Shown here piece after piece: positions 289 through 62,388 of a stretch of 64,000 bases of DNA. The position numbers and the translations under genes were made by a program. Source of the DNA: Ascidiella aspersa (Eukaryota); contig OZ004608.1 in assembly GCA_963924565.1 (NCBI GenBank), positions 6,448,001 to 6,512,000 of the forward strand, read 5' to 3'. The notes beneath the pieces were generated by a model. It had not been told where the DNA came from and did not search any database. It was given only the letters and a program-made list of their open reading frames with translations. Each line of letters starts with the position of its first letter. Within the stretch, counting starts at the first letter, position 1.

Positions 289-3200
289 TTACACCACGTC
301 TTGGTAAGCATCGTTGCTTGGTGATTGGTGGCCATCATTTGTTTGCCCATGCTGACTATTTTCGCCGCCTTCTGTCAGACCGGATGTCACTATTGAGCAT
401 TCACGGTGCTCAATATATCCCGCTTCATCTTGTACGACTGGTAACCGTGGATATGGTTGAACGCAGCCAGTTTCATCACCGTCGTCACTATTCCCTACAT
501 AAAAAAACAAAAAAATGAATTAAGCATTTTTTAAGGGTAAAGTGCTGTGTGTAATGACTGTCAATGACCTTAAGTGCACTTTTTTGTCACATTTTCCTAA
601 TGATTTAACTTGATTACGTCGTTTTGTTAAAATGATTCAAAATATTTTAGACAAATGACTTTACTTTACCTTACGCCATTAATTAAGTTTCTTGGTTTGA
701 AATTAAGGGTTTTACTTTTCTATTTTGCTATAGAATTGAGCTATTATTCTCAAGGTGTACGTGAAAAACCATTAAGTTGCTACATGCTAATATTTGTTGT
801 ATTAGTTAAATTATTGCTCATAATTGGACTAATTTAATTTTTTATCGTTTTAATATTATATTAGGGGTTGATATGATTGGCACATAAGTCTTTGGACACT
901 TGAGTGTGTTTTTTTCAAAAATGACTTGTTTACAACACTGGTAAAATGAAACGATTTTTTTGTAATTCTTACTTGGAACATTTATCGTTATTGAGCTTCC
1001 GGGGTTGAGTTCAAAGAGGCCTGCCTCATTCCGAATCACCGGTAATATGAGATTGGGCTGAACGTAGTCAGGGTCAACGAAATCGTTGCTATTTCCTGTT
1101 TAAATATTGGGCTTTACTTATTAGACAATATAAAGCAGGGGTTCTTAAACTGGGGTCCATGGACCCCTTGGGGGTCCGTGAACCAGTTTTAGGGGGTTCA
1201 TGAAAACCTAATTGAAATATTAGTGTATACTAATGAAGTAAACAATTGATAAACAAAACAATTTAATTCTGAATAAAACGGATTTTCACTGAATGTATTT
1301 AGACTTAATTTCACTTTCCCATTTTTGGACCGAAATCAGCAAACTTATAAAGTTTATTTGTACCGTGACGTCAATTTATGAACTTTTTTGCCTACAGTGG
1401 TCCATGCGAGCTAAAAGAAAATTTTGGGGTCCGCGGTAAAAAAACCTTAAGAACCCCTGATCTAAAGCAAATGCTTTTGGGCAAGTGCCACCACAAACTG
1501 AGACAAGGTCGATTTTAATACGTAAACGTTTAGTTTTTATTTTAACTCTGTGTTCCTAACCGGCAAAGTATTTTATAGTAGTGTATAAAAGAGTGAAAAT
1601 TTTCATACGTGAACATCAATAAAGTTACAGTTAAGTCTTCACTTTTTTAATGGAAACCTTTAACACCTTCGTCGCAAACAACCCCAGCACGATCGGTTGA
1701 GCATTAGTAGACATAGGCTTGACTCGACTGCGCAGTTTCCTATTAAGTGACGAGTGTCGGGAGCGGGACGTTAAAAAAGTGACAGAGATATGAAGACTGA
1801 ACAAAATAAAAAAATCTCCAAGAATTACTGAAATAAGGCAACATACCTAGTTGTTCGTTCGGTGTGAATCTAGCGGCGTTTTGAGTTCTTCTACAAAAAA
1901 AAACATTATTCATGTATAATTGAACATTATAAATTGGATCTAAGCTATATTGTTAAATCGGAATATGTTTCGTTTGTTGAAAGTTTTTCTTATCAATCAT
2001 GCAAGAAGTATTAAACAGGACTGCTGCGAATTCGAACTTTACTGGTTCAAAAATTCCACAAATCCGAAACGAATAAAGAAATTTCAAATATATGGGTGCA
2101 AACTAATTTTACATAAGATGAGTGTAAACGAACAAAAGGGTTTGGGTGCAGTGAATTTACATAAAATTGAAGTAGAAATGTTGCAATTTTTTTATAAATT
2201 GCTTTTTAATGTGTGTCGCGCGTATTTATTATCCGACCTTGCATACCGATAATTTGCAGCGTTTTAGAACAACCTCGTCAAACATTTTAAATCTTTAAAT
2301 CCCTTTCAAGAAAACTGTATGAATGTCGTACTTTTTGAGCCATTGGTGGAATTCGGGTAATTTGTTATTATGATACATTACATTGTTGACAAATAAAAAC
2401 TCGATACGCACTTTCCTGAAGTTATAATTGAATACAATTAAACTTAAGAAAAAAATCAAAATTGTTTGCCAAATTAAATTTGGAATGCTACTTTCAATTC
2501 TCAAAATGTCTTCATAGTCATGTAAGAGTAATAAATCGCTCTGTTTTATTTTTATATATAAACACCTAATACGTAAGCTGTGGACTTTCACTCACCTTAT
2601 ACAAATTCCAACCATCACTGTTACAAAACACAGTATTGCAACATTGACTACAGAAGCAGCCACAATAATGGTCGTAAATTCAGCTCTTTGTATACAAAAA
2701 TGTTTCTTGTAACCTGCAAGTTAAAGAAAATGAAGATCAGTTTAGAACAAGAACTAGAAATGTATCGCATTGCAGTCAAACAAATTGAAATATGACATTG
2801 TTATTACCTGTTGGTGTGAGTTCTTGTGTTTTTTCGAGGTGTTTCTCTCTATTCGTTATGCTTTCGGCATTCGTCAACGGTTCTGCTAACACAGCCATTG
2901 TTTTTAAATAAGTTTAGAGCACTGCTGCATATCATCAAACTTATTCGTTTATCATAACGAGTTTAAGGATTTTACAAATAAAACTCATGGATAAGGTGCA
3001 TTTATAGTTGCTGTATGTAAAACTTTTAAATATCAAAAGTCATATAGCTGTCGAAAATGTAATAATGTTGTGCTAATTTCCCTTTTTGTTTAAAAAGCGT
3101 GGGAATTTGTCCATGCTCCACAAAACCATATAATTTTCTTTTGTATCTATACGTAAATGCAAATTTGTTATCTGAATTAGGTTTCTATGTCTTAGCCCAT

Positions 3201-4185
3201 TAAAAAACGATTTAGCCGAAATGCGTCGGCTACCAATCGCAACAAAACAGAAAAAAAATATCGTGCTTTTGTGTTGCTTTGTGTAAATCAATAATATCTT
3301 TGTTTTGTTGCTTTTGATTTAAAAGTAACTCCTTCAACATAGTGTTTTAACAAAATAAACGAACTGTGTGGTATTCTTAAGGCTACTGGGTCAAGGATTG
3401 CTGAATTCATGGAAGATGGTTTAAAACTAAGTGTAATGCACCACCCACCAAAACGAGAAATATTTTGCACCCCTGCTGTAGGTTTGACAGAATAATTTCG
3501 TATTTCAAAGATAACTAAAAGAAAAATATCGAATTATTTTAAGTGTGCTCACTTGTGATAGGTGTAAGCTATAGAAGTTAACGTTAATCGATTTAATCAC
3601 CTTTAATTGAAATGCGTTTTTCTGTCATCAAAGGCGTTTCTAAAATATATAAGTGCTAATCAGAAAAAAATGAATCAGCTCTCACCAAATTTTCTCTGAC
3701 AAATGTACTTTTCCTTTCTACTGCATCGCATGTCAATCCATTTGTAGTCGGGACCACGTTCCATTGCTGCACAATCCTCACTGAACGTCAAATCATTCGG
3801 TTCTCCAGGAGCCCAATGTTGGTGATATAATCTCGTTCTATCCAACCATTGAAAGGTTTCGTTTGTATCCTTCCTCTTTAGTCCAATGTAATGAGTGCTT
3901 GCTTCATCTAGTGTGGAAATAAAACTAAGGTATTTTTATTATTATTTTGCGTCAGGGTCTATTACCTTCAGTTTTTCGTAAATGCGTTGCTAGAAACTTT
4001 TGAATTGATTCTGATTTAACAATTGCGAGTCTTCCGTACATTCTAACACAAGCTGAAGAAGCATCGTAAAAGTTTAACTTGTTTTTGGTTTCTATGAAAT
4101 ATTCCAAGTTGTCCAGACGATGCCAAACAGCAACAGAACTTTCGGCTGTCTTCAAAAGCACAAGTACTTTCAGAAACGTCCACAT
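289..4185 (-). CDS. Type I transmembrane C-type lectin receptor A1 (EPN-type CTLD, short stalk, QDEAGY-repeat tail)
   Basis: Exons with GT-AG and matching phases: 4185-3966 (MWTFLKVLVLLKTAESSVA signal + CTLD N-half), 3907-3686 (YIGL..WAPGEPND..C..WID..C), 2882-2808 stalk, 2713-2596 TM (TTIIVAASVVNVAILCFVTVMVGICIR), 1890-1847, 1095-973, 494-289 ending DAYQDVV*. Confidence 0.85.
1136..1459. mobile_element. hAT-like MITE
   Basis: TIRs CAGGGGTTCTTAA / TTAAGAACCCCTG, 8-bp TSD ATATAAAG/ATCTAAAG; empty site present in the B and C2 paralog introns (e.g. about 9106-9113). Confidence 0.85.
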
Positions 4186-8384: not shown

Positions 8385-11300
8385 TTAAGCATTCAGGGTG
8401 ATATATCCCGCTTCATCTTGTACGACTGGTAACCTTGGATTTGGTTGAAGGTAGCCAGTTTCATCAACGTCGTCACGGTTCCCTAATTAAAAAAACAAAA
8501 CAATAAAGCTTTCTTTTTCGGGTAAAGTGCAGTGTTGTAATGACTTAGGTCAATGACCTAACTTAAGTGCACTTTTTTGTCACATGTTTTAAATGATTTA
8601 ACTTGATTACTTCGTTTTGTTAAAATGACTCAAAATATTTTAGACCAATGGCTTTACCTTATGACATTAATTAAGTTTCTTGGTTTGAAAGTAAGGGTTT
8701 TACTTTAACATTTTAATATAGAATTGAGCTATTATTCTCGAATTTTGCTTGAAAAACCATTAGATTGCTACATGTTAATACTTATTTTTTAAGCTCATTT
8801 ATTGCTCATAATTGGGATAATTTAAAATATTTACTGGTTTATCGTTTTATTATTATTTAGTGATTAAGTTGACTAGGACTTTTTTGTCTTTCTAAAATGA
8901 CTTGTTTACAACACAGGTAAAGTGAAACGAAAGCTTTTGGGTAATTCTTACTTGGAACACTTATCCTCATTGAGCTTTCGGGGTTGAGTTCAAGGACGCC
9001 TGCCTCATCCCAAATTACTGGTAACATTATATTGGGCTGAACGTAGACAGTTTCAGCAAATTCGTTGCTATTTCCTATTTAAATATTAGGCTTTTATTAT
9101 TATACAATCTAAAGCGAATGCTTTTGGGCAAATGGCACCACAAACTAATAAAATGCCGATTTTAATATGTAAACGTTAATGGGTAAGGGATTGGAAATTT
9201 TCCAACATAAAGTCAAGAAATTAGGTCAAAATGTGACGTGACAAATCTAGTCGAACCTATGTAGCAATGGGGTGGTTTTCGATATATTCAACCAAATCGT
9301 GCTGGGATTGTTGTCCACAAGGCTGTTAAAATGTTCAAATCAAAACAGTGCTCACTAAAGTGCGTTTATTTTCACAGAATCTTAAATCAGAAATCACTAA
9401 AATGGAGAAGAAAAAAAACATCTAATGAAATAGAATCAATCAAATAAGGCAACATACCTATCTGCTCGCTTTCTCTGGATGTGTGTTCACTCCTTCTGGT
9501 CCTTCTATAGCAAATGACATTGATCAGGTGTAAATTAACTTTCTTATTCGGATCAAACTAGGCTTGGTAAGTCTGTCAATTGACCGGTCAAATACTCATA
9601 TTGGATTGAAATGTTGTAAATTTGAGTTTTTCATAATCTTGATTGTAACTTTTTTTAAACAATTTAATTATGAAATGGTAGGGTGTGTTGTGTTGTAATA
9701 ATAAATTGTTTTGCAAAGCAGATTTATTTTGTTTAGAATAAATGCAATTATATGATGAATCGCGTTAATCATAAAAGAAAACAATAGTTGGGGTATACCA
9801 CAATATGAGGCTTCTTAGAAATTAAGAAGAATCAATTGCCTTATCTGATGATTTAGAACAGGGTGGCCCAACTGCAGGCCCTTGGCCCGCGAGTTACGCT
9901 TTATTGGTCCGCGAACTGATAGTCAACTTACCTTACATCTAGCAATATCACTTTAATTGTTGTTTTTTTGTTATTGTAATTGACAAAAAAAACATTTTAA
10001 TGATCCTTTGCGAATTGTAGCACCACTAAGCAAAAGTGTATAATCTCACATGTAATGTAGCATTTATTTTATTGAGTTCACTTCATAAGCATATAGGCTA
10101 CGTATAAAGCAATAATCTTAAGAATCGCTATTTAAAAACATTGGCCCGCAAGATAAAAAAAATAAAAAAACAGTTTTTGGCCCGCAAGATAAAAAAATGT
10201 TTTTGGCCCGCAATGAAAAGATGTTGGACCACGCTGATTTAGAAGATTTAGAGTGACAAAAGTTGTGATGAGGAGTAAAAATATTTTTTACTGATGCATT
10301 TACTTGTTGTTAAATTGCGGTAATAATTTGTTGGCTTAACTTTGTGGTTGTAGTAATGGTAAAAATCACTACAATACTGCTATAGTATTGCTTGCAAGAT
10401 GGGCATGGTTTTACAAAAAAATCTTATTAATAGTTGCAAAATGATGGTTTTTGATTTACAAACCATTGTAATTAAGTCAAAACTTTCATATATTTATTTA
10501 AAGGTAAAATCAAGTTTTTGTTTTAACTTCAATTGCCTTATGATAGTGTGTATAGTATTTGACCTATATTTGACCTATTTGACGAGGATTGTATATGACC
10601 GGTCAAATGACAACCCTAGATCTAACCTAATATTATTTATTCGGATTATGTTTAGTTCGTTGAAAGTTATTCTTATCATGCAACAATAATTAAACAGGAC
10701 TGCTGCCAATTCAAAGTTTACTGGTTCTGATAAATTCCAATTATCCGAAACACATAAAAATATCAACAATTTGCATGCAACTGAATTTTAAATAAGGAGG
10801 AATGGGAACGAACACAGCGTTCAAGTGTAACAATCTGGAGTTAATTTACATGTGGAACTGAAAATAAATGTAGAAATGTTGTATGTTTATAAATTGCTTT
10901 TCAATGTATTCCGCGTATTTATTTTCAGAACCTGCTTACCTATAATTTGCAGCGTTTTCAATAAACGTCGACAATTATATTTTAAATCCCTTTACAAAAT
11001 CTCGCACTCATATTTTTTATTTTTTTTTTGAAGAGTAATGACGCAAAACACGATTCGTAAATGTGTAACAATATGCGAGACACCGTTGGGTCGTATGGTT
11101 TTAGACATAGCTTCTTGATTTGGCAAAACTGTATGTAGACTAAGTCTACGATTTGCATCGCTTCTGCCAATGAGCACTGCTAATTTGTACATTATGGTGC
11201 ACTTTACCAACCTTATGCAAAGCACGGCAATAACAATCACTGCACAGCAAAGCAGCACAACCCCGCAAATTGATGCTGCCAGTATGGTAGTTTGGTGCTG

Positions 11301-12741
11301 CGCTGCCTTTCCTGCTTCCAGTGTGTTGTCAACTGTAACACAGCAAGCTAAATTTATTATGTAGAGAGTTCATTCTAGCTACCAATGAAACTCTGCTTGC
11401 AAAATAGTCTAATTGTCCAATACCGTAGGATAATAAGGAGATATTGACTTATACCTAAGGATGAAATGCAAAGGTACCTGTGGAATAAGTTTGAGTGACG
11501 GTGCCAATGTTTGTTGTTATATTTGTTCCAAAATCGCCTTTGTTTTGATCTTTGAACAAAAGTAATAAATTTATAGAGTTTTACGAGTAACACATTTTTA
11601 ATCTTTATTGTCCCATCAACACGTAAAATACAATAAGGAGGACATTTGAGCATTTAGTGTTTTCGGAGGACCATTGAGTTTATTTAGAAAAGAGGGCATA
11701 TTATAGCCCTACCGTACTCATAAAGCATTCTATTTAATAACAACACAAACATTTCATATAATTTCCAAACTTATAAACGTTAACCGTAACTTAAATTAGT
11801 CAGTGAATAAATACTGCTGTTTGGAAAATTATAACGTTCGGGCCAAACGCTTAAAAATTGTGTTATTTAAACACTAGTAATTATTTTTGAGCAAGAGTTA
11901 CATTCGCTCATATCGTAAGATTTTTGTTTTTAGTCAACACTTTGAAATCGCATAGTATCTAAATACCGATATGGCGAATTAAGTACAACAGCAAACCTAC
12001 CTGTTGAAACGAGACTAGCTGTTGGAACATCGAACGTAGTTCGATCAATCTCACTTTTGGAGACATCAAATCCAACGTATGACGTTGAAGTTAACAAGTT
12101 TAATGATCTTTGTGTTGTTGATGACACAGCTGTGGTGGTAGTAGCTTCATCTATGTGTTAAGTCAAATAAATAGTCAAATGAAAATACACGTTATGCCTA
12201 ATTTCAGTTGATTTAAGTCGTGGCAGATTTTCTTACCAATTTTTCGTTGGCAAATGAACCCTTCTTTTCTATTGCACTGTATATCAACCCACAGATAGTC
12301 TGGGCCATCTTCCATAGCTCCGCACTTCTCGTTGTCAAAAATAGAGGCGCTTTCCTCGCCAGGGGCCCACTTGGTATAATTTAGAAGTGTCCCATCCCAC
12401 CATTTAAATTTTCCACCGGTTTTGTGTAATCCGATATAGTAAGTCTTTAGATTTCCTAAACAGCATCGAATTATTAAACAACGACATTTCGTGTAATTAT
12501 AGCTGTTGTGCGTTTTTATACCTTTGGTGCTGTTAAGTTGCTTTGCTAAGAAAACCTGAATATCGGGCGTGTCAACTTTCGCCAAAGTTCCATTCATTTT
12601 AACACAAGCATCCGAGGCTTCCTTAAAGTTAAGTCGCCTGCTTCTTTCGATATAGTATTCAAATTTACCATGCCGCTGCCAAAGAGCTGAAGAACTTTCG
12701 GCCAACGCAAACACAGTAAGGGTATAAACATACATCTGCAT
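8385..12741 (-). CDS. Type I transmembrane C-type lectin-like receptor B1 (non-EPN CTLD; tail ends in hemITAM-like QDEAGYITLNA*)
   Basis: Exons 12741-12522, 12455-12237 (WAPGEES..WVD), 12150-12001 S/T stalk, 11332-11212 TM (ILAASICGVVLLCCAVIVIAVLCIR), 9504-9458, 9074-8952, 8482-8385. Last exon has a 4-nt deletion relative to paralogs giving an early stop. Confidence 0.82.
9559..10618. mobile_element. Non-autonomous hAT-like element with a nested MITE (9859-10236)
   Basis: Subterminal inverted TGTCAATTGACCGGTCA / TGACCGGTCAAATGACA, TSD GATCAAAC/GATCTAAC, absent from the A intron. Inner element CAGGGTGGCCCAAC..GTTGGACCACGCTG has TSD ATTTAGAA. Copies also at about 48164-49170 and 59206-60263. 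Confidence 0.75.
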
Positions 12742-24247: not shown

Positions 24248-25051
24248 CTCTAACACATAGTAAAGAACACTTTATTTGTACTAATTTCATTTTGTATTTA
24301 AAACAATTAGTTAATCGTTGTTTTTAGAGCACACACCACTCAATTTTTGGCAAACGAAATTGCCGAGTTTGCCGCAATCTACATCTAACCAACTGAAGTT
24401 GAATCTTTTCTCCATCGCAGTGCATTTATTAGGTTTTTAATGAAGTGGTTCTCAATCTTTTATGGCTTACGGCACCCCTTAAAAAAAGAAAATCGATTTT
24501 CGGCACCCTTACTGGAATTTTTGTATTTTAATAAAATGTCGCTATAAATGGAACTGGAACAACACAATCAACTTAAAACATTTAGTAAAATATCATTTGG
24601 TATAATGGTCTCTAATCCTACACAAATAGTTCTATCAAAATGCCTACCAATTGAGCAAAAATTAGATTTTAAAAAATTCTTGAATATCTATCGGCACCCT
24701 TCAGCTAAATGAGCCACAAAAACATGTTTGGATGCCACACTTTTTTAAACCATGCTTGTCTATTTTTTCCGTATAAATACGTCATTTTGTTTTGAAACTG
24801 CTTTTATAATAATTACTTGGTATTAGGTACTCTCATTAGCGCCATCTAACGGCTGCTATACTAACTCTCTAGCACTACAAATATTCACTAAGCAATTTAG
24901 CCTTTGTAATCGCCTTGCTTTACGAATTAGACTTTAAACGTTTGAAAACAGATATGTTTGTTTACAATGATTTTCTAAGTGGACTTGAAACTTAAGTGAA
25001 CGCTACCGATAGAATTGCAAGTATTTCAAATCTTGTTTGTTTTTTATTCAG

Positions 25052-46986: not shown

Positions 46987-49900
46987 TTAAGCATTCAGGG
47001 TGATATATCCCGCCTCATCTTGTACGACTGGTAACCTTGGATTTGGTTGAAGGTAGCCAGTTTCATCAACGTCGTCAATGTTCCCTAATTGAAACAAACA
47101 CAATAAAGCTTTCTTTTTTGGGTAAAGTGCAGTGTTGTAATGACTTAGGTCAATGACCTAACTTAAGTGCACTTTTTTGTCACATGTTTTAAATGATTTA
47201 ACTTGATTACTTCGTTTTGTTAAAATGACTCAAAATATTTTAGACCAATGGCTTTACTTTACCTTATGACATTAATTAAGTTTCTTGGTTTGAAAGTAAG
47301 GGTTTTACTTTAACATTTTAATATAGAATTGAGTTATTATTCTCGAATTTTGCTTGAAAAACCATTAGATTTCTACATGTTAATACTTATTTTTTAAGCT
47401 CATTTATTGCTCATAATTGGACTAATTTAAAATATTTACTGGTTTATCGTTTTATTATTATTTAGTGATTAAGTTGACTAGGACTTTTTTGTCTTTCTAA
47501 AATGACTTGTTTGCAACACAGGTAAAGTGAAACGAAAGCTTTTGGGTAATTCTTACTTGGAACATTTATCCTCATTGAGCTTCCGGGGTTGAGTTCAATG
47601 ACGCCTGCCTCATCCCAAATTACTGGTAACATTAGATTGGGCTGAACGTAGACAGTTTCAGCAAATTCGTTGCTATTTCCTATTTAAATATTAGGCTTTT
47701 ATTATTGGCAATCTAAAGCGAATGCTTTTGGGCAAATGCCACCACAAACTGATAAAATGTCGATTTTAATATGTAAACGTTTATGGGTAAGGGATTGGAA
47801 ATTTTCCAACATAAAGTCAAGAAATTAGGTCATAATGTGACGTCACAAACCTAGTCGAACCTATGTAGCAATGGGGTGGTTTTCGAAATATTCAACCAAA
47901 TCGTGCTGGGGTTGTTTTCGACAAAGCTGTTAAAAAGTTCAATTCAAAAAGTCCACACTAAAGTGCGTATATTTTCACAGTATCTTAAATCAGAAATCAC
48001 TGAAATGGAGATGAATAAAACAAATCTATACTGAAATAGAATTAATCAAATAAGGCAACAAACCTATCTGCTCGCTTGCTCTGGATGTGTGCTCACTCCT
48101 CCTGGTCCTTCTATAGCAAATGACATTGATCATATATAAATTAACATCTTATTCGGATCAAACTAGGCTTGGCAAGCCTGTCAATTGACCGGTCAAATAC
48201 TCAAATTGGATTCAAATGTTGTAAATTTGAGTTTTTATAATCTTGATTGTAACTTTATTATACAATTCAAATGTGAAATGGTAGGATTTTTTGTGTGGTA
48301 ATAACAAAGTGTTTGTAATAGCAAATTAGATTTATTTTGTTTAGAACAAATGCACTTATATGATGAATCGCGTTTTTCATAAAATAAAACAATATTTGGG
48401 GTATACGACAATCTGAGGCTACTTAGAAATTAAGAAGAATCAAATGCCTTATGTGAAGATTTAGAATAGTGTGGCCCAACTGCAGGCCCTTGGCCCGGGA
48501 GTTACGCTTTTCTGGCCCGCGAACTGATAGTCAGCTTAGCTTCCATCTAGCAATATCACTTCAATTTTTGTTTTTTTGTTATTGTAATTGACAGAAAAAA
48601 CTTTGTCAATTATCCTTTGTGATTTGTAGCACCACTAAGAAAAAGTGTATAATCTCACAGGTAATGAAGCATTTATCGTAATGCATTCACTTCATCAGCA
48701 TAGGCTATTTATAAAGCAATAAGCCTAAGAATCGCTATTTAAAAGCATTGGCCCGCGATGAAAAGATGTTGAACCACGCTGATTTAGAAAATTCAGAGTG
48801 ACCAAAGTTGTGATGAGGAGTAAAAATATTTTTTACTGATGCATTTACTGTTTTTAAATTGCGGTAATAAACTTGTTGGCTTAACTTGGTGGTTGTAGTA
48901 ATGGTAAATAATTACTTCAATAATGCTATAGGATTGCTTGCAAGATGGGCATGGTTTTGCAAAAAATCTTATTGATACTCACAAATAGATAAAATAATTG
49001 TTTTTGTTTTACAAATCATTGTACTTGAGTCAAAACCTTCATATATTTATTTAAAGGTAAAATCAAGTTTTTTTTAACTTCAATTGCATTATGTTAGTGT
49101 GTATAGTATTTGACCAATATTTGACCTATTTGACGAGGATTGTATATGACCAGTCAAATGCCCAACCCTAGATCTAACCTAATATTATTTATTCGGATTA
49201 TGTTTAGTTTGTTGAAAGTTATTCTTATCATGCAAGAATAATTAAACAAGACTGCTGCCAATTCAAAGTTTATAGTTGCAATAAATTCCAAAAATTCGAA
49301 ACACATAAAAACTATCAACAATTTGCATGCAACTAAATTTTAAACAAAGAGGAATGGGAACGTACAACAGCGTTTAAATGTAACATTCTGGTATTAATTT
49401 ACATGTGGAACTAAAAATAAATGTAGAAATGTTATATGTTTATAAATTGCCTTTCAATGTATTCCGCGTATTTATTTTCAGAACCTGACTGCCGATAATT
49501 TGCAGCGTTTTTAATCAACGTCGACAATTATATTTTGAATCCCTTTAAACAATCTCGCACTCATATTTTTTAAAAAGTAGCTCAGTGATGGAATGCGGGT
49601 AATTTATTATTTTTACACATTCAATTATTTACGAATAGAAACTCCATACGCACATTATTAAAGTTTGTTATTGGGATTGCATATAACAAATATAAAACTT
49701 AATCAAAAAAAGCTATGTTGTTAGCCAACTTAAAGTTGGGATGCCGAACTCATGTTAAAACGTTCTTTTAAAGTGTTGAGTAACAGATCGTTTTTGATTT
49801 CGATTTATACGCAAGTTGTGGACTTTCACTTACCTTATACAAATCAGAACCACCACTGTCGTTAAACATAGTATTACAAAATTGCCCACAGAAGCAGCCA

Positions 49901-51791
49901 CAATAATGATTGTAAATTCAGCTCTTGGTATACCAAAAGGCTTGTCGTCTACTGCAAGTTAAAGTGAATGAAGATCCGTTAAGAACAACAACTAGAAATA
50001 TATCGCAATATTTATTATTTTATACAGTCGGTGCTTTGCCGAATAATCAACTTAAATTGATTTACTTGGCACCGAAATTATGTACCTGATTTTGTGGATT
50101 CTTCAGTTATTTTGAGCTGATGGGTCACGTCCGTTGCTCTTACAGCGTTGTCCATATGTTCTTCTAATATAGCCGTTGTTATTGTTTACTAGTCTATTTC
50201 TTATTACGTAAAGCACAAACATGAAATTGGTAGCATATAGCTAAACTTAATTTTTATCTTAATGTCAAGGTAACCTGTTGAATTGTAGTGTACTGATTGA
50301 AATTCGACAGTTGTCGGAATGTTTGTCTTATATTTGCTAACAATTGATTGCGATGTATATTTGATAACAGTTGATTGCGATGTATATTTGCTAACAGTTG
50401 ATTGCGATGTATATTTGATAACAGTTGGTTGCGATGTATATTTGCTAACAGTTGATTGCGATGTATATTTGATAACAGTTGGTTGCGATGGTTGATGTAT
50501 CATTGCGTCGTTTGTCGGTTTGTTTCGCTCTGTAATAGAACTCAAAACGATATTTGTCATGGAGTTAGACCACCGTAGTAATTTTCATACGTGTATTTCG
50601 TTGTCTCACTCTATGAATCTACTGCCATGCAGCATGCACGTACACGCCCAGTACACGCCCAGTAGACGCGTTTCTCGCGTTGCTATTTCGCTAGCGTCCC
50701 GAAGGCGCAGTAATGAATGGTTTACGTTGGAATGGTAATTGCATTCTGCGCCCTATATAAACGTGCGTGTTATCCGTTCTTTCATTCCAATTCACTTCTA
50801 CGTCTATGAGCAATAAACCTTCTACGAATACACCATTTACAAACATTACAAATATAACAATTGAATAGACAGAAGAAAACCAAGTGAGACAATTATTATG
50901 CGGTAGGATTCTGGTTGTTCAAAAACCTTACCTATTTCGTGCCACAAACTAATAGTGTACTACTGTACTATAAAGTATTTGTGTTCTAAATGTAAGCTAC
51001 ACGCTGATGCCCAAAATCTATGTATCTTTATTCGCCTTAAAAAACGCTTTAAAACTTATTTATTAAAACAACATAAAGCGAGTAACCTGTAGACGTAAAG
51101 CGAGTTGATGAAGCTGCGATGTTTGTAAAACCAGTCGTCGTGATATCGCTGTTTGTTCCAGAAGTTGCCGTCTGAGTATTTAACTCATCTTGTGTTGAAG
51201 TGTGTGGTTCTGCAATCCAAATTATGTTAAACATGAGATGGTGGCATGTTAGTTTAAAAGCTTGAAATTCCTTACCGAAGTTTCTCTGGCAAATGTACTT
51301 TCTTTTTAAGGTGCATCGCAAGTCAACCAATCTGTATTCGGGACCACGTTCCATTGCTGCACAGTTTTCACTTTTCGTCAAATCATTCGGTTCTCCAGGA
51401 GCCCAATGTTGGTAATATAATTGCGATTCATCCAACCATTCAAAGTTTCGGTTTGTACCTATCCTCTTTAGCCCAATGTAATGAGAGCTTGGTGTGTCTA
51501 GAGTAGACATGAACTATAGGGTTTATACAGTACATTCTTGCTTAATAGCTTGAGACAGGGTTTATACTTACCTTCAGTTTTTCGTAAATGCGTCGCTAGA
51601 AACTTTTGAATCGATTCTGATTTAACAATTGCAAGCGATCCGTTTATTCTAACACAAGCCGAAGAAGCATCGTGAAAGTTTAGCTTATTTTTTGTTTCAA
51701 TGAAGTATTCCAAGTTGTCTAGACGATGCCAAACAGCAACAGAAAATTCTGCTGTCGTCAAAAGCACAAGTACACACTGAAGAATGTGCAT
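46987..51791 (-). CDS. Chimeric type I C-type lectin receptor C2 (C ectodomain, expanded stalk, A-like TM, hemITAM-like tail)
   Basis: Exons 51791-51572, 51497-51276, 51209-51087, 50529-50275 (27-nt repeats), 50163-50086, 49951-49834 (TM IIIVAASVGNFVILCLTTVVVLICIR), 48110-48064, 47679-47557, 47084-46987 ending QDEAGYITLNA*. Confidence 0.82.
50327..50490 (-). repeat. Coding 27-bp minisatellite (6 x SQ[P/S]TV[I/S]KYT) in the C2 stalk
   Basis: GTTGATTGCGATGTATATTTGMTAACA units; only 2 units in C1. Confidence 0.9.
50555..50835 (+). mobile_element. Probable solo LTR in a C2 stalk intron
   Basis: About 280-bp GC-richer insert absent from the C1 intron, TG..CA ends, internal TATATAAA and AATAAA; TSD not clear. 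Confidence 0.5.
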
Positions 51792-53127: not shown

Positions 53128-53654
53128 TCAGCTCTCACCGAATTTTCTCTGACAAATGTACTTTCTTTTTAAGGTGCATCGCATGTCAATCCATCTGTAG
53201 TCGAGACCACTTTCCATTGCTGCACAGTCCTGACTGAACGTCAAGTCATTGGGCTCTCCGGGAGCCCAATGTGGATGATATAATTGCGATCCATCCAACC
53301 ATTCAAAGTTTCGGTTCGTACCTATCCTCTTTAGCCCAATGTAATGAGTGCTCGGTGTGTCTAGAGTAGACATAAACTATAGGTTTTATACAGTATATTC
53401 CTTCTTGGTAGCTTAAGACAGGGTCTATACTTACCTTCCGTTTGTCGTAATTGCGTTGCTAGAAACTTTTGAATCGATTCTGATTTAACAATTGCAAGCG
53501 TTCCGTTCATTCTAACACAAGCCGAAGAAGCATCGCTAAATTTTAGGTTATTTTTGGTTTCAATGAAGTATTCCAAGTTGTCTAGACGATGCCAAACAGC
53601 AACAGAAAATTCTGCTGTCGTCAAAAGCACAAGTACACACAGAATAATGTGCAT
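53128..53654 (-). CDS. Signal peptide + CTLD cassette C3 without its own stalk/TM exons (secreted lectin, alternative 5' cassette, or truncated duplicate)
   Basis: Exons 53654-53435 and 53360-53139 are intact with EPND and WID. Read-through of the donor gives FGES*. No stalk or TM exon seen before the C2 promoter. Confidence 0.65.
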
Positions 53655-56591: not shown

Positions 56592-59500
56592 TTACACTAC
56601 GTCTTGGTAAACATCGTTGCTAGGTGATTGGTGGCGATCACTTGTTTCGCAACGTTGCCCATCCTGTCTATTCTCACAGCCTCTAGTCAGACCGAATGCC
56701 ACTATTGAGCATTCAGGGAGCTCAATATATCCCGCTTCATCTTGCACGACTGGTAACCTTGGATTTGGTTGAAGGTAGCCAGTTTCATCAACGTCGTCTC
56801 TGTTCCCTAATAAAAAAACAAAACAATAAAGCTTTCTTTTATAGGTAAAGTGCAGTGTTGTAATGACTTAGGTCAATGACCTAACTTAAGTGCACTTTTT
56901 TGTCACATGTTTTGAATGGTTTAACTTGATTACTTCGTTTTGTTAAAATGACTCAAAATATTTTAGACCAATGGCTTTACTTTACCTTATGACATTAATT
57001 AAGTTTTTTGGTTTGAAATTAAGGGTTTTACTTTACCATTTAACTATAAAATTGAGCTATATACCTCGAATTTTGCTTGAAAAACCATTAGATTGCTACA
57101 TGTTAATATTTATTTTTTAAGCTCATTTATTGCTCATAACTGGACTAATTTAAAATATTTACTGGTTTATCGTTTTATGATTATTTAGTGATTAAGTCGA
57201 CTAGGAATTTTTGTCTTATTAAAATGACTTGTTTACAACACTGGTAAAGTGAAACGAAAGCTTTTGGGTAATTCTTACTTGGAACATCTATCCTCATTGA
57301 GCTTCCGGGGTTGAGTTCAAGGACGCCTGCCTCATCCCGAATGACTGGTAACATTAGATTGGGCTGAACGTAGTCAGTTTCAGCAAATTCGTTGCTATTT
57401 CCTAATTAAATATTAGGCTTTCATTATTAGGCAATCTAAAGCGAATGCTTTTGGGTAATTCTTACTTGGAACATTTATCCTCATTGAGCTTCCGGGGTTG
57501 AGTTCAATGACGCCTGCCTCATCCCGAATGACTGGTAACATTTTATTTGACTGAACGTAGTCAGTTTCAGCACATTCGTTGCTATTTTCTATTTAAATAT
57601 TAGGCTTTCATTATTAGACAATCTAAAGCGAATGCTGTTGGGCAAATGGCACCACAAACTGATAAAATGCCGATTTTAATATGTAAACGTTAATTAAGGA
57701 ATTGGAAATTTTGCAACATAAAGTCAAGAAATTAGGTCATAATGTGACGTCACAAATCTAGTCGAACCCATGTAGCAATGGGGTGGTTTTCGAAATATTC
57801 AACCAAATCGTGCTGGGGTTGTTTTCCACAAAGCTGTTAAAAAGATCAATTCAAAAAGTGCACACTAAAGTGCGTATATTTTCACAGAATCTTAAATCAG
57901 AAATCACTAAAATGGAGAAGAATAAAAAAAATCTACTGAAATTGAATTAATCAAATAAGGCAACATACCTATCTGCTCGCTTGCTCTGGATGTGTGCTCA
58001 CTCCTTCTGGTCCTTCTATAGCAAATGACATTGATCATGTATAAATTTACATTCTTATTCGGATCCTGTCAATTGAACGGTCAAATACTCATATTGAATT
58101 CAAATTTTGTAAATTTGAATTTTCATAATCTTGATTGTAACTTTATTAAACAATTCAAATGTGAAATGGTAGGATTTTTTGTGTGGTAATAACAAAGTGT
58201 TTGTAATAGCAAATTAGATTTGTTTTAAATGATTCAACTTGATTAAGTCGTTTTGTTTAAATGACTCCAAATATTTCAGACACGTGACTTTCTTTTACCT
58301 TATGACATTAATTCAGTTTACTTGGTTTGATATTAGGGTTTTATTCGACCATTTTACTATAGAATTGAGCTATTATTCTCGAATTGTGCTTGAAACACCA
58401 TTAATTAGATTGCTGCATGTCAATACTTCTTTTTTTGTGTGTTGATTTATTGCTCATAATTGGACTAATTTAAAATATTTACTGGTTTATCGTTTTATGA
58501 TTATTTAGTGATTAAGTCGACTAGGACTTTTTTGTCTTTTTAAATGACTTGTTTGCAACACAGGTAAAGTGAAACGAAAGCTTTTGGATAATTCTTACTT
58601 GGAACACTTATCCTCATTGAGCTTCCGGGGTTGAGTTCAAGGACGCCTGCCTCATCCCAAATGACTGGTAAAATTATATTGGGCTGAACGTAGACAGTTT
58701 CAGCAAATTCGTTGCTATTTCCTATTTAAATATTAGGCTTTTATTATTAGACAATCTAAAGCGAATGCTTTTGGGCAAATGGCACCACAAACTAATAAAA
58801 TGCCGATTTTAATATGTAAACTTTTATGGGTAAGGGATTGGAAATTTTGCAACATAAGGTCAAGAAATTAGGTCATAATGTGACGTCACAAATCTAGTCG
58901 AACCTATGTAGCAATGGGGTGGTTTTCGAAATATTCAACCAAATCTTGCTGGGGTTGTTTTCCACAAGGCTGTTAAAACGTTCAAATCAAAACAGTGCTC
59001 ACTAAAGTGCGTTTATTTTCACAGAATCTTAAATCAGAATTCACTAAAATGGAGAAGAAAAAAAACATCTAATGAAATAGAATCAATCAAATAAGGCAAC
59101 ATACCTATCTGCTCGCTTTCTCTGGATGTGTGTTCACTCCTTCTGGTCCTTCTATAGCAAATGACATTGATCAGGTGTAAATTAACTTTCTTATTCGGAT
59201 CAAACTAGGCTTGGTAAGTCTGTCAATTGACCGGTCAAATACTCATATTGGATTGAAATGTTGTAAATTTGAGTTCTTCATAATCTTGATTGTAACTTTT
59301 TTTAAACAATTTAATTATGAAATGGTAGGGTGTGTTGTGTTGTAATAATAAATTGTTTTGCAAAGCAGATTTATTTTGTTTAGAATAAATGCAATTATAT
59401 GATGAATCGCGTTAATCATAAAAGAAAACAATAGTTGGGGTATACCACAATATGAGGCTTCTTAGAAATTAAGAAGAATCAATTGCCTTATCTGATGATT

Positions 59501-62388
59501 TAGAACAGGGTGGCCCAACTGCAGGCCCTTGGCCCGCGAGTTACGCTTTATTGGTCCGCGAACTGATAGTCAACTTACCTTCCATCTAGCAATATCACTT
59601 TAATTGTTGTTTTTTTTGTTATTGTAATTGACAAAAAAAACAATTTAATGATCCTTTGCGAATTGTAGCACCACTAAGCAAAAGTGTATAATCTCACATG
59701 TAATGTAGCATTTATCTTATTGAGTTCACTTCATAAGCATAGGCTATGTATGAAGCAATAATCTTAAGAATCGCTATTTAAAAACATTGGCCCGCAAGAT
59801 AAAAAAAATAAAAAACAGTTTTTGGCCCGCAAGATAAAAAAATGTTTTTGGCCCGCAATGAAAAGATGTTGGACCACGCTGATTTAGAAAATTTAGAGTG
59901 ACAAAAGTTGTGATGAGGAGTAAAAATATTTTTTACTGATGCATTTACTTGTTGTTAAATTGCGGTAATAATTTGTTGGCTTAACTTGGTGGTTGTAGTA
60001 ATGGTAAAAATCACTACAATACTGCTATAGTATTGCTTGCAAGATGGGCATGGTTTTACAAAAAAATCTTATTAATAGTTACAAAATAATTGTTTTTGAT
60101 TTACAAACCATTGTAATTAAGTCAAAACTTTCATATATTTATTTAAAGGTAAAATCAAGTTTTTGTTTTAACTTCAATTGCATTATGATAGTGTGTATAG
60201 TATTTGACCTATATTTGACCTATTTGACGAGGATTGCATATGACCGGTCAAATGACAACCCTAGATCTAACCTAATATTATTTATTCGGATTATGTTTAG
60301 TTCGTTGAAAGTTATTCTTATCATGCAAGAATAATTAAACAGGACTGCTGCCAATTCAAAGTTTACTGGTTCTGATAAATTCCAATTATCCGAAACACAT
60401 AAAAATATCAACAATTTGCATGCAACTGAATTTTAAATAAGGAGGAATGGGAACGAACACAGCGTTCAAGTGTAACAATCTGGAGTTAATTTACATGTGG
60501 AACTGAAAATAAATGTAGAAATGTTGTATGTTTATAAATTGCTTTTCAATGTATTCCGCGTATTTATTTTCAGAACCTGCTTACCTATAATTTGCAGCGT
60601 TTTCAATAAACGTCGACAATTATATTTTAAATCCCTTTAAAAAATCTCGCACTCATACTTTTTATTTTTTATTTTTGAAGAGTAATGACGCAAAACACGA
60701 TTCGTAAATGTGTAACAATATGCGAGACACCGTTGGGTCGTATGGTTTTAGAAATAGCTTCTTGATTTGGCAAAACTGTATGTAGACTAAGTCTACGATT
60801 TGCATCGCTTCTGCCAATGAGCACTGCTAATTTGTACATTATGGTGCACTTTACCAACCTTATGCAAAGCACGGCAATAACAATCACTGCACAGCAAAGC
60901 AGCACAACCCCGCAAATTGATGCTGCCAGTATGGTAGTTTGGTGCTGCGCTGCCTTTCCTGCTTCCAGTGTGTTGTCAACTGTAACACAGCAAGCTAAAT
61001 TTATTATGTAGAGAGTTCATTCTAGCTACCAATGAAACTCTGCTTGCAAAATAGTCTAATTGTCCAATACCGTAGGATAATAAGGAGATATTGACTTATA
61101 CCTAAGGATGAAATGCAAAGGTACCTGTGGAATAAGTTTGAGTGACGGTGCCAATGTTTGTTGTTATATTTGTTCCAAAATCGCCTTTGTTTTGATCTTT
61201 GAACAAAAGTAATAAATTTATAGAGTTTTACGAGTAACACATTTTTAATCTTTATTGTCCCATCAACACGTAAAATACAATAAGGAGGACATTTGAGCAT
61301 TTAGTGTTTTCGGAGGACCATTGAGTTTATTTAGAAAAGAGGGCATATTATAGCCCTACCGTACTCATAAAGCATTCTATTTAATAACAACACAAACATT
61401 TCATATAATTTCCAAACTTATAAACGTTAACCGTAACTTAAATTAGTCAGTGAATAAATACTGCTGTTTGGAAAATTATAACGTTCGGGCCAAACGCTTA
61501 AAAATTGTGTTATTTAAACACTAGTAATTATTTTTGAGCAAGAGTTACATTCGCTCATATCGTAAGATTTTTGTTTTTAGTCAACACTTTGAAATCGCAT
61601 AGTATCTAAATACCGATATGGCGAATTAAGTACAACAGCAAACCTACCTGTTGAAACGAGACTAGCTGTTGGAACATCGAACGTAGTTCGATCAATCTCA
61701 CTTTTGGAGACATCAAATCCAACGTATGACGTTGAAGTTAACAAGTTTAATGATCTTTGTGTTGTTGATGACACAGCTGTGGTGGTAGTAGCTTCATCTA
61801 TGTGTTAAGTCAAATAAATAGTCAAATGAAAATACACGTTATGCCTAATTTCAGTTGATTTAAGTCGTGGCAGATTTTCTTACCAATTTTTCGTTGGCAA
61901 ATGAACCCTTCTTTTCTATTGCACTGTATATCAACCCACAGATAGTCTGGGCCATCTTCCATAGCTCCGCACTTCTCGTTGTCAAAAAAAGAGACGCTTT
62001 CCTCGCCAGGGGCCCACTTGGTATAATTTAGAAGTGTCCCATCCCACCATTTAAATTTTCCACCGGTTTTGTGTAATCCGATATAGTAAGTCTTTAGATT
62101 TCCTAAACAGCATCGAATTATTAAACAACGACATTTCGTGTAATTATAGCTGTTGTGCGTTTTTATACCTTTGGTGCTGTTAAGTTGCTTTGCTAAGAAA
62201 ACCTGAATATCGGGCGTGTCAACTTTCGCCAAAGTTCCATTCATTTTAACACAAGCATCCGAGGCTTCCTTAAAGTTAAGTCGCCTGCTTCTTTCGATAT
62301 AGTATTCAAATTTACCATGCCGCTGCCAAAGAGCTGAAGAACTTTCGGCCAACGCAAACACAGTAAGGGTATAAACATACATCTGCAT
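56592..62388 (-). CDS. Type I transmembrane C-type lectin-like receptor B3 with amplified tail exons
   Basis: Exons 62388-62169, 62102-61884, 61797-61648, 60979-60859 (TM), 59151-59105, 58721-58599, [58015-57969 extra juxtamembrane exon], 57588-57466, 57401-57279, 56806-56592 (QDEAGYIEL..DVYQDVV*). Confidence 0.8.

What the first reader, a model, noticed from the sequence alone, without database searches (positions are those of the whole stretch)
289..62388. Mix-and-match cluster of C-type lectin receptors with swappable signalling tails (candidate invertebrate paired-receptor system)
Seen: seven spliceable type I CTLD receptor genes share intron phases (phase 1 across the ectodomain, phase 2 after the TM exon), so modules are interchangeable. 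Observed combinations: A-CTLD + A-TM + repeat tail (A1, A2); B-CTLD + B-TM + repeat tail (B1, B3); B-CTLD + B-TM + ITIM/NPLY tail (B2); C-CTLD + long stalk + NPLY/YATI/PDZ tail (C1); C-CTLD + A-TM + hemITAM-like tail (C2). Established: vertebrate paired receptors (Ly49, NKR-P1, Dectin cluster, KIR) couple similar ectodomains to opposing tyrosine motifs, but the lectin ones are type II proteins. Inference: this is an independently built, type I, recombination-driven paired-receptor locus for pathogen or self/non-self recognition.
Basis: partly seen in the sequence, partly recalled or inferred. Interest (0 to 1): 0.92.

Follow-up and report, generated by a model that had tools for sequence, protein, structure and literature searches.

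The report
Sea-squirt lectin receptors with swapped tails
The window holds seven intact-looking genes for membrane lectin receptors from a large gene family found so far only in this sea squirt; recombination has joined similar outer sugar-lectin heads to different inner tails, but whether they act as opposing immune receptors, or are expressed at all, is untested.

Summary
Observation confirmed. Seven minus-strand gene models (310-446 aa) splice into complete type I proteins: signal peptide, C-type lectin domain (CTLD), stalk, membrane span (TM) and tail. The window also holds a CTLD-only unit and a relic CTLD.

The window lies in a subcluster of at least 26 genes over about 240 kb, inside a CTLD supercluster of about 1.7 Mb on one chromosome of a probable ascidian. 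The scan has already noted sister arrays 0.3-0.9 Mb away (s1-790843, s1-801635, s1-801701).

Module swapping is real:
- B1 matches B2 (91-95%) down to window 11042, and matches C2 (91-93.5%) from 11019 onward.
- Trees of the CTLD, TM and tail blocks conflict (AU p 7e-4, 1e-61, 0.002).
- One 4-nt deletion, which creates the tail ending DEAGYITLNA*, sits in six genes of three ectodomain/TM classes.
- The loop after PGEE in B-type CTLDs is hypervariable (pN 0.33, against 0.078 elsewhere).

The "paired activating/inhibitory receptor" reading rests only on short motifs. The NPLY-repeat tail is also found about 0.45 Mb away in the supercluster and resembles layilin's talin-binding repeats, so adaptor or endocytic coupling is an equally good reading. 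No RNA evidence could be obtained. I rate it a new variant of a known kind, of moderate interest.

The parts
289..4185 (-). Gene A1: A-type CTLD + A-type TM + A-type Y tail, no stalk. Exons 3966-4185, 3686-3907, 2596-2713 (TM), 1847-1890 (JM), 973-1095 (123-nt Y exon), 289-494 (last exon, long form ending ...SNDAYQDVV*).
   Evidence: Exon mapping. Complete 310-aa ORF with AG/GT at every border.
8385..12741 (-). Gene B1: B-type CTLD + S/T stalk + B-type TM + Y tail, short form ending DEAGYITLNA*. Exons 12522-12741, 12237-12455, 12001-12150, 11212-11332 (TM), 9458-9504 (JM), 8952-9074 (Y), 8385-8482 (last).
   Evidence: Borders read directly. 325-aa ORF. Pfam Lectin_C E 1.3e-14.
11019..11042 (-). 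Recombination junction in the B1 intron, about 170-190 nt 3' of the TM exon. Upstream of it B1 aligns with B2 at 91-95%. Downstream it aligns with C2 at 91-93.5%.
   Evidence: Self-BLAST and locus-to-locus BLAST.
12325..12351 (-). Hypervariable nine-codon loop of the B-type CTLD, directly after PGEE. It aligns with the loop after EPS/EPN in mannose-receptor CTLDs.
   Evidence: Alignment. pN 0.33 in the loop against 0.078 in the rest of the CTLD. PDB alignment.
16864..19593 (-). Gene B2: B-type CTLD + stalk + B-type TM + second tail class. Exons 19374-19593, 19089-19307, 18853-19002, 18155-18275 (TM), 17517-17560 (JM), 17353-17433 (exon with VVYSGI), 16864-17081 (three E-x-V-[TA]-NPLY repeats, then stop).
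   Evidence: Read directly. 350-aa ORF. Five copies of this tail class lie in the subcluster.
24314..24436 (-). Relic of a further CTLD type. Only the last ~35 residues of a CTLD remain, and no upstream CTLD exons were found.
   Evidence: Similar relics lie at window-equivalent 74.0 kb and 153.3 kb.
32556..35723 (-). Gene C1: C-type CTLD + four stalk exons + C1-type TM + third tail class (NPLY, YATI, C-terminal ETDL*). Exons 35504-35723 (GC donor), 34952-35173, 34763-34885, 34344-34493, 34134-34211, 33962-34039, 33739-33859 (TM), 33082-33122 (JM), 32556-32704.
   Evidence: 393-aa ORF. The last exon of this tail has only three copies in the genome.
38512..42725 (-). Gene A2: same architecture as A1. 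Exons 42506-42725, 41897-42118, 40806-40923 (TM), 40067-40110 (JM), 39197-39319 (Y), 38512-38717 (last).
   Evidence: 310-aa ORF.
46987..51791 (-). Gene C2: C-type CTLD + three stalk exons (one built of 27-nt repeats) + C2-type TM + the same Y tail (short form) as B1. Exons 51572-51791, 51276-51497, 51087-51209, 50275-50529, 50086-50163, 49834-49951 (TM), 48064-48110 (JM), 47557-47679 (Y), about 46987-47084 (last).
   Evidence: 427-aa ORF. Tail is 93% identical to the B1 tail.
53139..53654 (-). Unit X: a tandem duplicate of the C2 5' flank (promoter-like region) plus CTLD exons 1-2 (53435-53654, 53139-53360). Open frame and splice signals are intact, but it has no TM exon or tail of its own.
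56592..62388 (-). Gene B3: 98% identical to B1 from the promoter to the first Y exon, then an expanded tail. Exons 62169-62388, 62102-61884, 61648-61797, 60859-60979 (TM), 59105-59151 (JM), 58599-58721 (Y), 57969-58015 (second JM exon, out of phase if included), 57466-57588 and 57279-57401 (two more Y exons), 56592-56806 (last exon, long form with YIEL).
   Evidence: ORF of 364 aa with one Y exon or 446 aa with three.

Best explanation
This is a slice of a tandemly amplified family of type I, single-CTLD membrane receptors in a probable ascidian; no close relative turned up in the protein databases searched.

How it is built. Every gene is made of phase-compatible exons: signal peptide plus CTLD in two exons, 0-4 stalk exons, one TM exon, one juxtamembrane exon, and tail exons. 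Unequal crossing-over or gene conversion between neighbouring paralogs has repeatedly joined the front of one gene to the back of another. The main site is the intron just 3' of the TM exon; a second lies between the CTLD and TM blocks. Three ectodomain classes, four TM classes and three tail classes therefore occur in at least six combinations.

What it probably does (inferred, not shown). The CTLD ligand loop diversifies fastest, so these are most likely cell-surface recognition receptors. Their output is probably set by which tail they carry:
- E-x-V-A-NPLY repeats (NPxY) would recruit PTB or FERM-F3 adaptors for cytoskeletal or endocytic coupling.
- The Y tail (YxQP, acidic-G-Y) would recruit as yet unknown SH2 or other partners.
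- The C1 tail (NPLY, YATI, ETDL*) would drive sorting and PDZ anchoring.
For: Gene models:
- Seven complete ORFs with canonical splice sites.
- Pfam Lectin_C matches.
- The closest solved CTLDs belong to the mannose-receptor family and CD23.

Family size:
- 26 genes lie in C2:6408001-6652000, about 20 of them intact in the exons checked.
- At least 96 CTLD exon matches lie between 5.87 and 7.54 Mb on the same contig.
- The Y tail is confined to 6.42-6.59 Mb.

Mosaic structure:
- B1 equals B2 upstream of window 11042 and equals C2 downstream of 11019.
- The gene at window -2547 matches the gene at -14808 at 93% up to a single point. From there it matches the B1/C2 Y tail at 92%.
- AU tests reject congruent trees: p 7e-4 for the CTLD block, 1e-61 for the TM block, 0.002 for the last exon.
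- One identical 4-nt deletion occurs in six genes of three ectodomain/TM classes.

Constraint:
- A-type CTLD pN/pS is 0.26 and A-type TM 0.30.
- The B-type loop after PGEE has pN 0.33 against 0.078 elsewhere. Introns between most B lineages differ by 0.02-0.07.

Age of the NPLY tail: a gene about 0.45 Mb away carries five ETVANPLY repeats.
Against: - There is no RNA evidence.
- B-type CTLDs overall (pN/pS about 0.8-1.8) and the common Y tails (1.6) evolve as fast as neutral DNA. This could mean relaxed constraint rather than diversifying selection.
- Five or six of the 26 genes are broken.
- Copies at 98-100% identity could in principle be assembly duplicates, although there are no gaps in 244 kb.
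- All coupling to adaptors is inferred from motifs of 4-8 residues.
Confidence: 0.55

Rival explanations
1. One reading: a true paired-receptor system. Near-identical ectodomains would carry an inhibitory tail (ITIM VVYSGI, recruiting an SHP-type phosphatase) or an activating tail (the hemITAM-like DEAGYITL, recruiting a Syk-type kinase). The system would serve pathogen or self/non-self recognition.
For: - B-type heads occur next to each other with either tail, three times over: B1/B2, B3/B4 and B5/B6.
- VVYSGI fits the ITIM pattern and is kept in all five copies.
- DEAGYITL has spread to six genes.
- The CTLD loop is hypervariable.
- A tunicate precedent exists: Botryllus FcoR type I receptors swap ITIM and hemITAM motifs (PMC12582321).
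Against: - By my estimate, a one-off ITIM match among four tyrosines is expected by chance in roughly one tail in four or five.
- The five copies are recent duplicates, so their conservation says little.
- DEAGY has two acidic residues, not three, and arose from a frameshift that also truncates the tail.
- Y tails show no purifying selection.
- No TM exon has a charged residue.
- The tail that carries the ITIM is dominated by NPLY repeats, which are not inhibitory motifs.
- There are no expression or binding data.
Confidence: 0.2
2. Layilin- or mannose-receptor-like adhesion or endocytic receptors. The tails would be sorting or cytoskeleton-linking signals (NPxY, YxxPhi, PDZ ligand). The variety of combinations would be a mostly neutral by-product of unequal crossing-over in a tandem array, with no opposing signals.
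For: - The closest solved CTLDs are those of the endocytic mannose-receptor family.
- Layilin is a type I single-CTLD protein with EPS at the sugar motif. It has three tail repeats, ESG(F/W)V + N(D/E)IY, that bind talin, plus YxxPhi motifs (PMC2132847).
- B-type genes have EES at that position and three to five E-x-V-[TA]-NPLY repeats.
- The C1 tail has NPLY plus YATI.
Against: - Orthology to layilin could not be tested.
- The Y tail, which is the commonest, has no NPxY motif.
- A hypervariable ligand loop and rapid gene turnover are more typical of immune-type families than of housekeeping endocytic receptors.
Confidence: 0.3
3. Largely dead or artefactual DNA. On this view most copies are unexpressed recent duplicates drifting toward pseudogenes. 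Alternatively the 98-100% identical blocks are two haplotypes wrongly laid in tandem by the assembler.
For: - pN/pS is near or above 1 in B-type CTLDs and Y tails.
- Five or six of 26 genes carry frameshifts, stops or lost splice sites.
- Duplicated blocks of 5-12 kb show 94.6-98.6% identity, a range I recall as matching ascidian heterozygosity.
Against: - About 20 genes keep six to nine exons open with intact splice sites at up to 10% divergence.
- A-type CTLDs are under clear purifying selection (pN/pS 0.26).
- Nonsynonymous change is concentrated in one loop rather than spread evenly.
- The 244 kb contain no N, and the duplicated blocks are interleaved with unique genes.
Confidence: 0.12

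Closest known systems
Vertebrate lectin-type paired receptors of the NK gene complex (Ly49, NKR-P1, CLEC-2/Dectin-1 cluster)
   Same: These are tandem clusters of CTLD receptors with fast gene turnover. Similar ectodomains carry different tyrosine-motif tails. CLEC-2 has a hemITAM of the form acidic-G-Y-x-x-L (my recollection of the sequence; a lead, not a test).
   Different: They are type II proteins with the tail at the N-terminus, whereas these are type I proteins with signal peptides. Activating members mostly use a charged TM residue and an adaptor, and none is present here. By sequence, these CTLDs are nearest to the mannose-receptor family and CD23.
Layilin (also CD302 and chondrolectin): vertebrate type I single-CTLD receptors
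   Same: The topology is the same: signal peptide, one CTLD, one TM span, a tail of about 100 aa. Layilin has EPS at the sugar motif and three tail repeats, ESG(F/W)V + N(D/E)IY, that bind the talin head, plus YxxPhi motifs (PMC2132847). B2-type genes have EES at that position and three E-x-V-[TA]-NPLY repeats.
   Different: Layilin is reported as a single conserved gene, not a diversifying array. Homology beyond the shared CTLD fold was not tested. Layilin has no Y-tail or C1-tail equivalents.
Botryllus schlosseri Fester co-receptors (FcoR)
   Same: They are tunicate type I receptors in polymorphic clusters. Their tails carry ITIM, hemITAM or other tyrosine motifs, and these are exchanged between alleles and by splicing (PMC12582321).
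   Different: Their ectodomains are Ig-like plus Sushi, not CTLD. Motif swapping there is shown with transcripts; here it is genomic and between paralogs. No link to an allorecognition locus is known for this cluster.
KIR, LILR and Siglec families
   Same: From general knowledge, new receptors arise in these families by unequal crossing-over and gene conversion. These events join similar ligand-binding domains to different TM and tail exons.
   Different: They are immunoglobulin-superfamily proteins, restricted to vertebrates, and their signalling has been shown experimentally.
Mannose-receptor family (MRC1, MRC2, PLA2R, DEC-205)
   Same: These give the best sequence matches to both CTLD classes (E 3e-23 and 4e-14). 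They are type I proteins with NPxY-like endocytic tail motifs (general knowledge).
   Different: They have 8-10 CTLDs plus other domains in one chain. The genes here have a single CTLD.

Membership tests
C-type lectin-like domain superfamily (Pfam PF00059) | Significant match to the Lectin_C profile above the curated cut-off, with four conserved cysteines and a WIGL-type motif. | tested here: met
   B-type frames score 52-55 bits (cut-off 22.6, E 1e-13 to 1e-14). A/C-type second exons score 43-52 bits. Four Cys and YIGL are visible in every intact copy.
Ca2+-dependent sugar-binding CRD (EPN/QPD plus WND) | EPN or QPD triplet, plus WND in strand beta4. | tested here: not met
   A/C types have EPN (a few have QPK) but WID/WVD in place of WND. 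B types have EES and WVD. Classical sugar binding is therefore doubtful, and other ligands are possible.
Type I membrane receptor | N-terminal signal peptide, a single hydrophobic span, and a C-terminal cytoplasmic tail that begins with basic residues. | tested here: met
   A hydrophobic leader follows the ATG. The TM exon holds 20-23 uncharged residues and ends ...CIR, followed by RRT.../RKSRKR.../RSK.... I judged this by eye; no predictor was run.
Paired (activating/inhibitory) immune receptors | Highly similar ectodomains on different genes. | tested here: met
   B1 and B2 are 83% identical over the 206-aa CTLD frame. The genes at window -14808 and -2547 differ at 2 CTLD residues yet have different tails. 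C1 and the gene at 115755 differ by about 1% in the 5' block.
Paired (activating/inhibitory) immune receptors | Opposite signalling: an ITIM on one member; an ITAM, hemITAM or charged TM residue with an adaptor on the other. | tested here: inconclusive
   There is one ITIM-pattern match (VVYSGI) and one hemITAM-like match (DEAGYITL). No TM exon has a charged residue. Function is not testable with these tools.
hemITAM | [E/D][E/D][E/D]xYxxL, as defined in PMC12582321. | tested here: not met
   The sequence is D-E-A-G-Y-I-T-L. The third acidic position is Ala, so the match is only hemITAM-like.
ITIM | (I/V/L/S)xYxx(I/V/L) in a cytoplasmic tail, binding SHP or SHIP phosphatases when phosphorylated. 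| tested here: inconclusive
   The sequence pattern is met by VVYSGI in all five B2-type tails. Phosphatase binding is not testable here, and a single match has a sizeable chance expectation.
Layilin family | Orthology to vertebrate LAYN, and talin binding through repeated tail motifs. | not tested
   Only the architectural resemblance could be compared, from the paper's description. No layilin sequence was available from a tool for alignment.

The most novel reading that the evidence does not exclude
An independently evolved, type I, lectin-based counterpart of vertebrate paired NK or myeloid receptors in an invertebrate chordate. One intron acts as a recombination joint that moves inhibitory-type, activating-type and sorting-type tails between ectodomains. 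The ligand loops of those ectodomains are under diversifying selection, giving the animal a tunable germline repertoire for pathogen or self/non-self recognition.
Probability: 0.2. Interest if true: 0.8.

Novelty: new variant of a known kind. Interest (0 to 1): 0.55.

Why it matters
Tunicates are the closest living invertebrate relatives of vertebrates, and they lack antibodies, T-cell receptors and MHC. A large, fast-evolving array of lectin receptors whose heads and tails are recombined at one intron would show that the "same head, different tail" design of NK and myeloid receptors can arise on a different scaffold and membrane orientation. The breakpoints and the spread of a single tail deletion give an unusually clear record of how such families are built. 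If the genes prove to be expressed in blood cells, the locus would be a tractable model for how germline receptor repertoires diversify. If not, it remains a good example of modular gene birth and death.

Tried and rejected

Database relatives:
- The search for homologous proteins found nothing with the B1 CTLD frame or the B2 NPLY exon.
- The HMMER search of 1.84 billion representatives gave only distant hits, typically 30-35% identical and mostly multi-CTLD proteins. Six shorter hits that I read were unrelated in architecture.
- The protein atlas returned only generic lectin clusters.
- A PDB search with the NPLY tail found nothing meaningful.

Other checks:
- Poly(A)-signal counts downstream of the stop codons were no higher than background.
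- The CTLD fragment at 24314-24436 has no upstream CTLD exons and was set aside as a relic.

Full report
SETTING

The window is AT-rich (33-37% GC) and has no gaps. It is G000:C2:6448001-6512000 of a 308.6-Mb genome that earlier agents of this scan took for an ascidian. All features discussed lie on the minus strand.

A self-comparison shows that the window is a patchwork of segmental duplications at 80-98% identity. For example, 8585-14347 matches 58221-63997 at 98.1%, 1-3899 matches 38213-42110 at 94.9%, and 7023-10149 matches 45642-48756 at 93.3%.

CHECKING THE OBSERVATION

Pfam finds Lectin_C in the large minus-strand open frames at E 1e-11 to 1e-14. I read the splice borders directly for B1, B2, A2, C1 and C2. 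I then mapped every module across the region by alignment to reference exons.

- The signal peptide and the first half of the CTLD form one exon that ends in phase 1.
- The second CTLD exon and all stalk exons are phase 1-1.
- The TM exon starts in phase 1 and ends in phase 2 (…ATAAG|GT).
- A 41-47-nt juxtamembrane (JM) exon restores phase 1.
- The 123-nt tyrosine exon is phase 1-1.
- The last exon starts in phase 1.

Joined in a local script, the seven models give uninterrupted proteins:
- A1, 310 aa
- B1, 325 aa
- B2, 350 aa
- C1, 393 aa
- A2, 310 aa
- C2, 427 aa
- B3, 364 aa with one Y exon or 446 aa with three

Every border is AG/GT except one GC donor in C1, which its two closest paralogs share.

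- There is an eighth CTLD unit, X (53139-53654). It is a tandem copy of the 5' flank (promoter-like region) and CTLD exons of C2, without its own TM exon or tail.
- A relic CTLD fragment lies at 24314-24436.
- B1 and C2 carry the same tail class.
- The TM exon of C2 is a class of its own, related to the A type (69% aa identity; sister group).

SURROUNDINGS

- The Y-tail last exon occurs only between 6.42 and 6.59 Mb of contig 2 (25 matches).
- CTLD exons at 69% identity or more to the A/C type number 17 and lie in the same stretch.
- CTLD exon matches at E 1e-8 or better number at least 96, nearly all between 5.87 and 7.54 Mb of the same contig.
- The C1-type last exon has three copies in the genome.
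- The NPLY-repeat exon has five close copies, plus weaker relatives at 6.90-6.93 Mb.

I fetched the flanks, giving 244 kb in all with no N. In this stretch I mapped 26 genes, which fall into these combinations:
- A-type CTLD, TM and Y tail: 7 genes.
- B-type CTLD and TM with the Y tail: 3 genes.
- B-type CTLD and TM with the VVYSGI/NPLY tail: 5 genes.
- C-type CTLD with C1-type TM and C1 tail: 3 genes.
- C-type CTLD with C2-type TM and Y tail: 4 genes.
- C-type CTLD with C1-type TM and Y tail: 2 genes.
- Unit X, and one truncated pseudogene.

Five or six genes carry frameshifts, stops or lost splice sites. The rest are intact in every exon checked.

Much of the window is one copy of a block of about 50 kb, B1-B2-relic-C1, that recurs as B3-B4-relic-C1' at 94.6-97.9% identity.

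MODULE EXCHANGE IS REAL

Four lines of evidence support it.

1. Sharp breakpoints.
   - B1 aligns with B2 at 91-95% from 600 nt upstream of the ATG down to window 11042. That point is about 170 nt past the TM exon.
   - From window 11019 to the end of the gene, B1 aligns with C2 at 91-93.5%.
   - The B-type and C-type ectodomain DNA gave no nucleotide alignment in these comparisons.
   - Just left of the window, the genes at -2547 and -14808 align at 93% through the promoter, CTLD, stalk, TM exon and 620 nt of intron. The alignment stops at one point, after which the first gene aligns with the B1/C2 Y tail at 92% and the second continues with a C1-type tail.
   - The gene at 115755 has a 5' block about 1% from C1. 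Its TM-to-tail half is closest to the gene at -2547.

2. Trees.
   - In the 5' block, the five genes with C1-type TM exons fall into two well-separated clades. Forcing them together costs 58 log-likelihood units (AU p 7e-4).
   - In the TM block, the clade seen in the 5' tree is rejected at p 1e-61.
   - In the last-exon block, the three B genes are not one clade (p 0.002).
   - These groups were named after I had seen the trees, so the p values are generous. The effect sizes are nevertheless large.

3. A shared derived character.
   - The same 4-nt deletion shifts …DEAGYIEH/L… to …DEAGYITLNA/V*.
   - It is present in six genes: two with B-type heads, three with C-type heads and C2-type TM, and one with a C-type head and C1-type TM.

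4. Depth of the Y-tail clade.
   - Within the B1-type Y tails, all nine genes form a shallow clade (branch lengths mostly 0.01-0.06).
   - Their heads, by contrast, differ by more than 50% in protein.

The simplest history is that B-type genes first carried the NPLY tail. That tail type also exists about 0.45 Mb away, with five ETVANPLY repeats. A crossover in the post-TM intron then grafted on the Y tail of a C2-like neighbour.

SELECTION

All values below are summed pairwise Nei-Gojobori estimates, so they are not independent.
- A-type CTLD: pN/pS 0.26.
- A-type TM exon: 0.30.
- A-type tails: 0.50.
- C-type CTLD: 0.59.
- C1-type tails: 0.81, from very few changes.
- NPLY tails: pN 0.024, against intron divergence 0.043.
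- B1-type Y tails: pN/pS 1.6 (all).
- B-type CTLD pairs: pN/pS 0.76-1.81.

In B-type CTLDs the change is concentrated. The nine codons after PGEE have pN 0.33 and pS 0.27, while the rest of the domain has pN 0.078 and pS 0.094. Introns between most B lineages differ by 0.02-0.07.

That loop aligns with the segment after EPS/EPN in mannose-receptor CTLDs. From general knowledge of CTLDs, this is the main ligand-binding loop.

Diversifying selection on the ligand site fits this pattern. Relaxed constraint combined with patchy gene conversion is not excluded.

A/C types keep EPN but have WID/WVD instead of WND. B types have EES. Classical Ca2+-dependent sugar binding is therefore doubtful.

WHAT THE TAILS MAY DO

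All of this section is inference from motifs.

- B2-type tail. It has a basic juxtamembrane exon, one exon with VVYSGI, and a last exon with three E-x-V-[TA]-NPLY-[ED] repeats about 20 residues apart.
  - NPxY is the classical ligand of PTB and FERM-F3 domains (established knowledge).
  - Layilin is a vertebrate type I single-CTLD protein with EPS at the sugar motif. It binds the talin head through repeated ESG(F/W)V + N(D/E)IY modules and also has YxxPhi motifs (PMC2132847).
  - The resemblance in architecture and motif is close. Homology was not tested.
- C1 tail. It has NPLY, YATI (a YxxPhi pattern) and a C-terminal ETDL (a class I PDZ-ligand pattern).
- Y tail. It consists of one to three copies of a ~41-residue unit, …[DE]x[DV]Y[VL]QPN..LPV[IV]..[DN]E[AS]G…, followed by a related last exon.
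  - YxxP is an SH2-ligand pattern for Crk/Nck-type adaptors (recollection, not tested).
- hemITAM and ITIM.
  - DEAGYITL resembles the CLEC-2 hemITAM. It fails the [E/D]3xYxxL definition used for Botryllus FcoR.
  - The single ITIM match has a sizeable chance expectation. Its conservation among recent duplicates is uninformative.
  - No TM exon carries a charged residue.

COMPARISON WITH WHAT IS KNOWN

- Both CTLD classes match the mannose-receptor family and CD23 best among solved structures.
- Matches in the 1.84-billion-protein library were typically 30-35% identical and never above 45%.
- In design, the locus behaves like KIR, LILR, Siglec or Ly49 families, which build hybrids by unequal crossing-over.
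- It also resembles the Botryllus FcoR genes, which swap ITIM and hemITAM tails.
- It differs in using a type I single-CTLD scaffold.
- Two full-text searches found no description of such a tunicate lectin array; a third, broader search returned only unrelated titles.
- The scan itself has already reported sister arrays on the same chromosome: s1-790843, s1-801635 and s1-801701.

LIMITS

- No RNA evidence could be obtained.
- Spliced proteins were joined only locally to check frames. Whole-protein searches, structure prediction and complex prediction were therefore left out.
- The species was not identified.

VERDICT

The gene models and the recombination-driven mixing of heads, membrane spans and tails are well supported. 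The claim of an activating/inhibitory paired-receptor system remains a hypothesis at about 0.2. An adaptor-coupling or endocytic reading is at least as likely. I rate this a new variant of a known kind, with interest 0.55.

Noticed in passing
window 53139-53654 (-): Unit X is a tandem duplicate of the C2 5' flank, signal peptide and both CTLD exons, with intact splice signals but no TM exon or tail. It could be a soluble lectin (read-through ends ...KFGES*), an alternative 5' cassette for C2, or a dead copy.
   Followed up: partly
window 24314-24436 and 22441-22629 (-): A relic C-terminal CTLD fragment of a different type, and 1.7 kb downstream an open frame with a strong TM-like segment. The CTLD relic recurs at window-equivalent 74.0 kb and 153.3 kb.
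   Followed up: partly
L019:5718-6002 (+) = C2:6904718-6905002: A tail exon with five tandem ETVANPLY repeats lies in another part of the CTLD supercluster, about 0.45 Mb from the window. The NPLY-repeat tail therefore occurs well outside this subcluster.
   Followed up: partly
window 50275-50529 (-), repeats at 50329-50490: The second stalk exon of C2 is built of 27-nt tandem repeats encoding Q-[SP]-T-V-[SI]-K-Y-T-S units. The C1 copy has fewer units, so stalk length varies by repeat number.
   Followed up: no
window 35504 (C1 exon 1 donor) and the matching sites at window-equivalent 85613 and 115536: The first intron of the three C1-like genes has a GC donor (GCAAGT) instead of GT.
   Followed up: no
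about 60-70 nt upstream of the ATG of A1, A2, C1, C2 and X (e.g. window 35790, 51860): A conserved ...TTGCAG acceptor-like site precedes the start codon. In ascidians this could be a spliced-leader trans-splice acceptor.
   Followed up: no
window 57969-58015 (-): B3 holds a second juxtamembrane exon between its Y exons. It would break the reading frame if included after a Y exon, so it is probably skipped or dead.
   Followed up: partly
window 5700-5846 and 43759-43917: Intergenic tandem repeats with a period of about 53-59 nt lie upstream of A1 and A2.
   Followed up: no
window 12456-12521 (-) and the same intron in all B-type genes: The 66-nt intron inside the B-type CTLD is in frame and free of stops in the B copies with an intact CTLD. 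It is also 3-4 times less diverged than the flanking exons among the intact B copies (p about 0.03, against about 0.10).
   Followed up: partly
window 36795-46324 vs C2:6581183-6590695: A 9.5-kb block containing A2 recurs 96 kb away at 98% identity, with identical CTLD and TM blocks. B2 likewise has a near-identical copy 177 kb away.
   Followed up: partly
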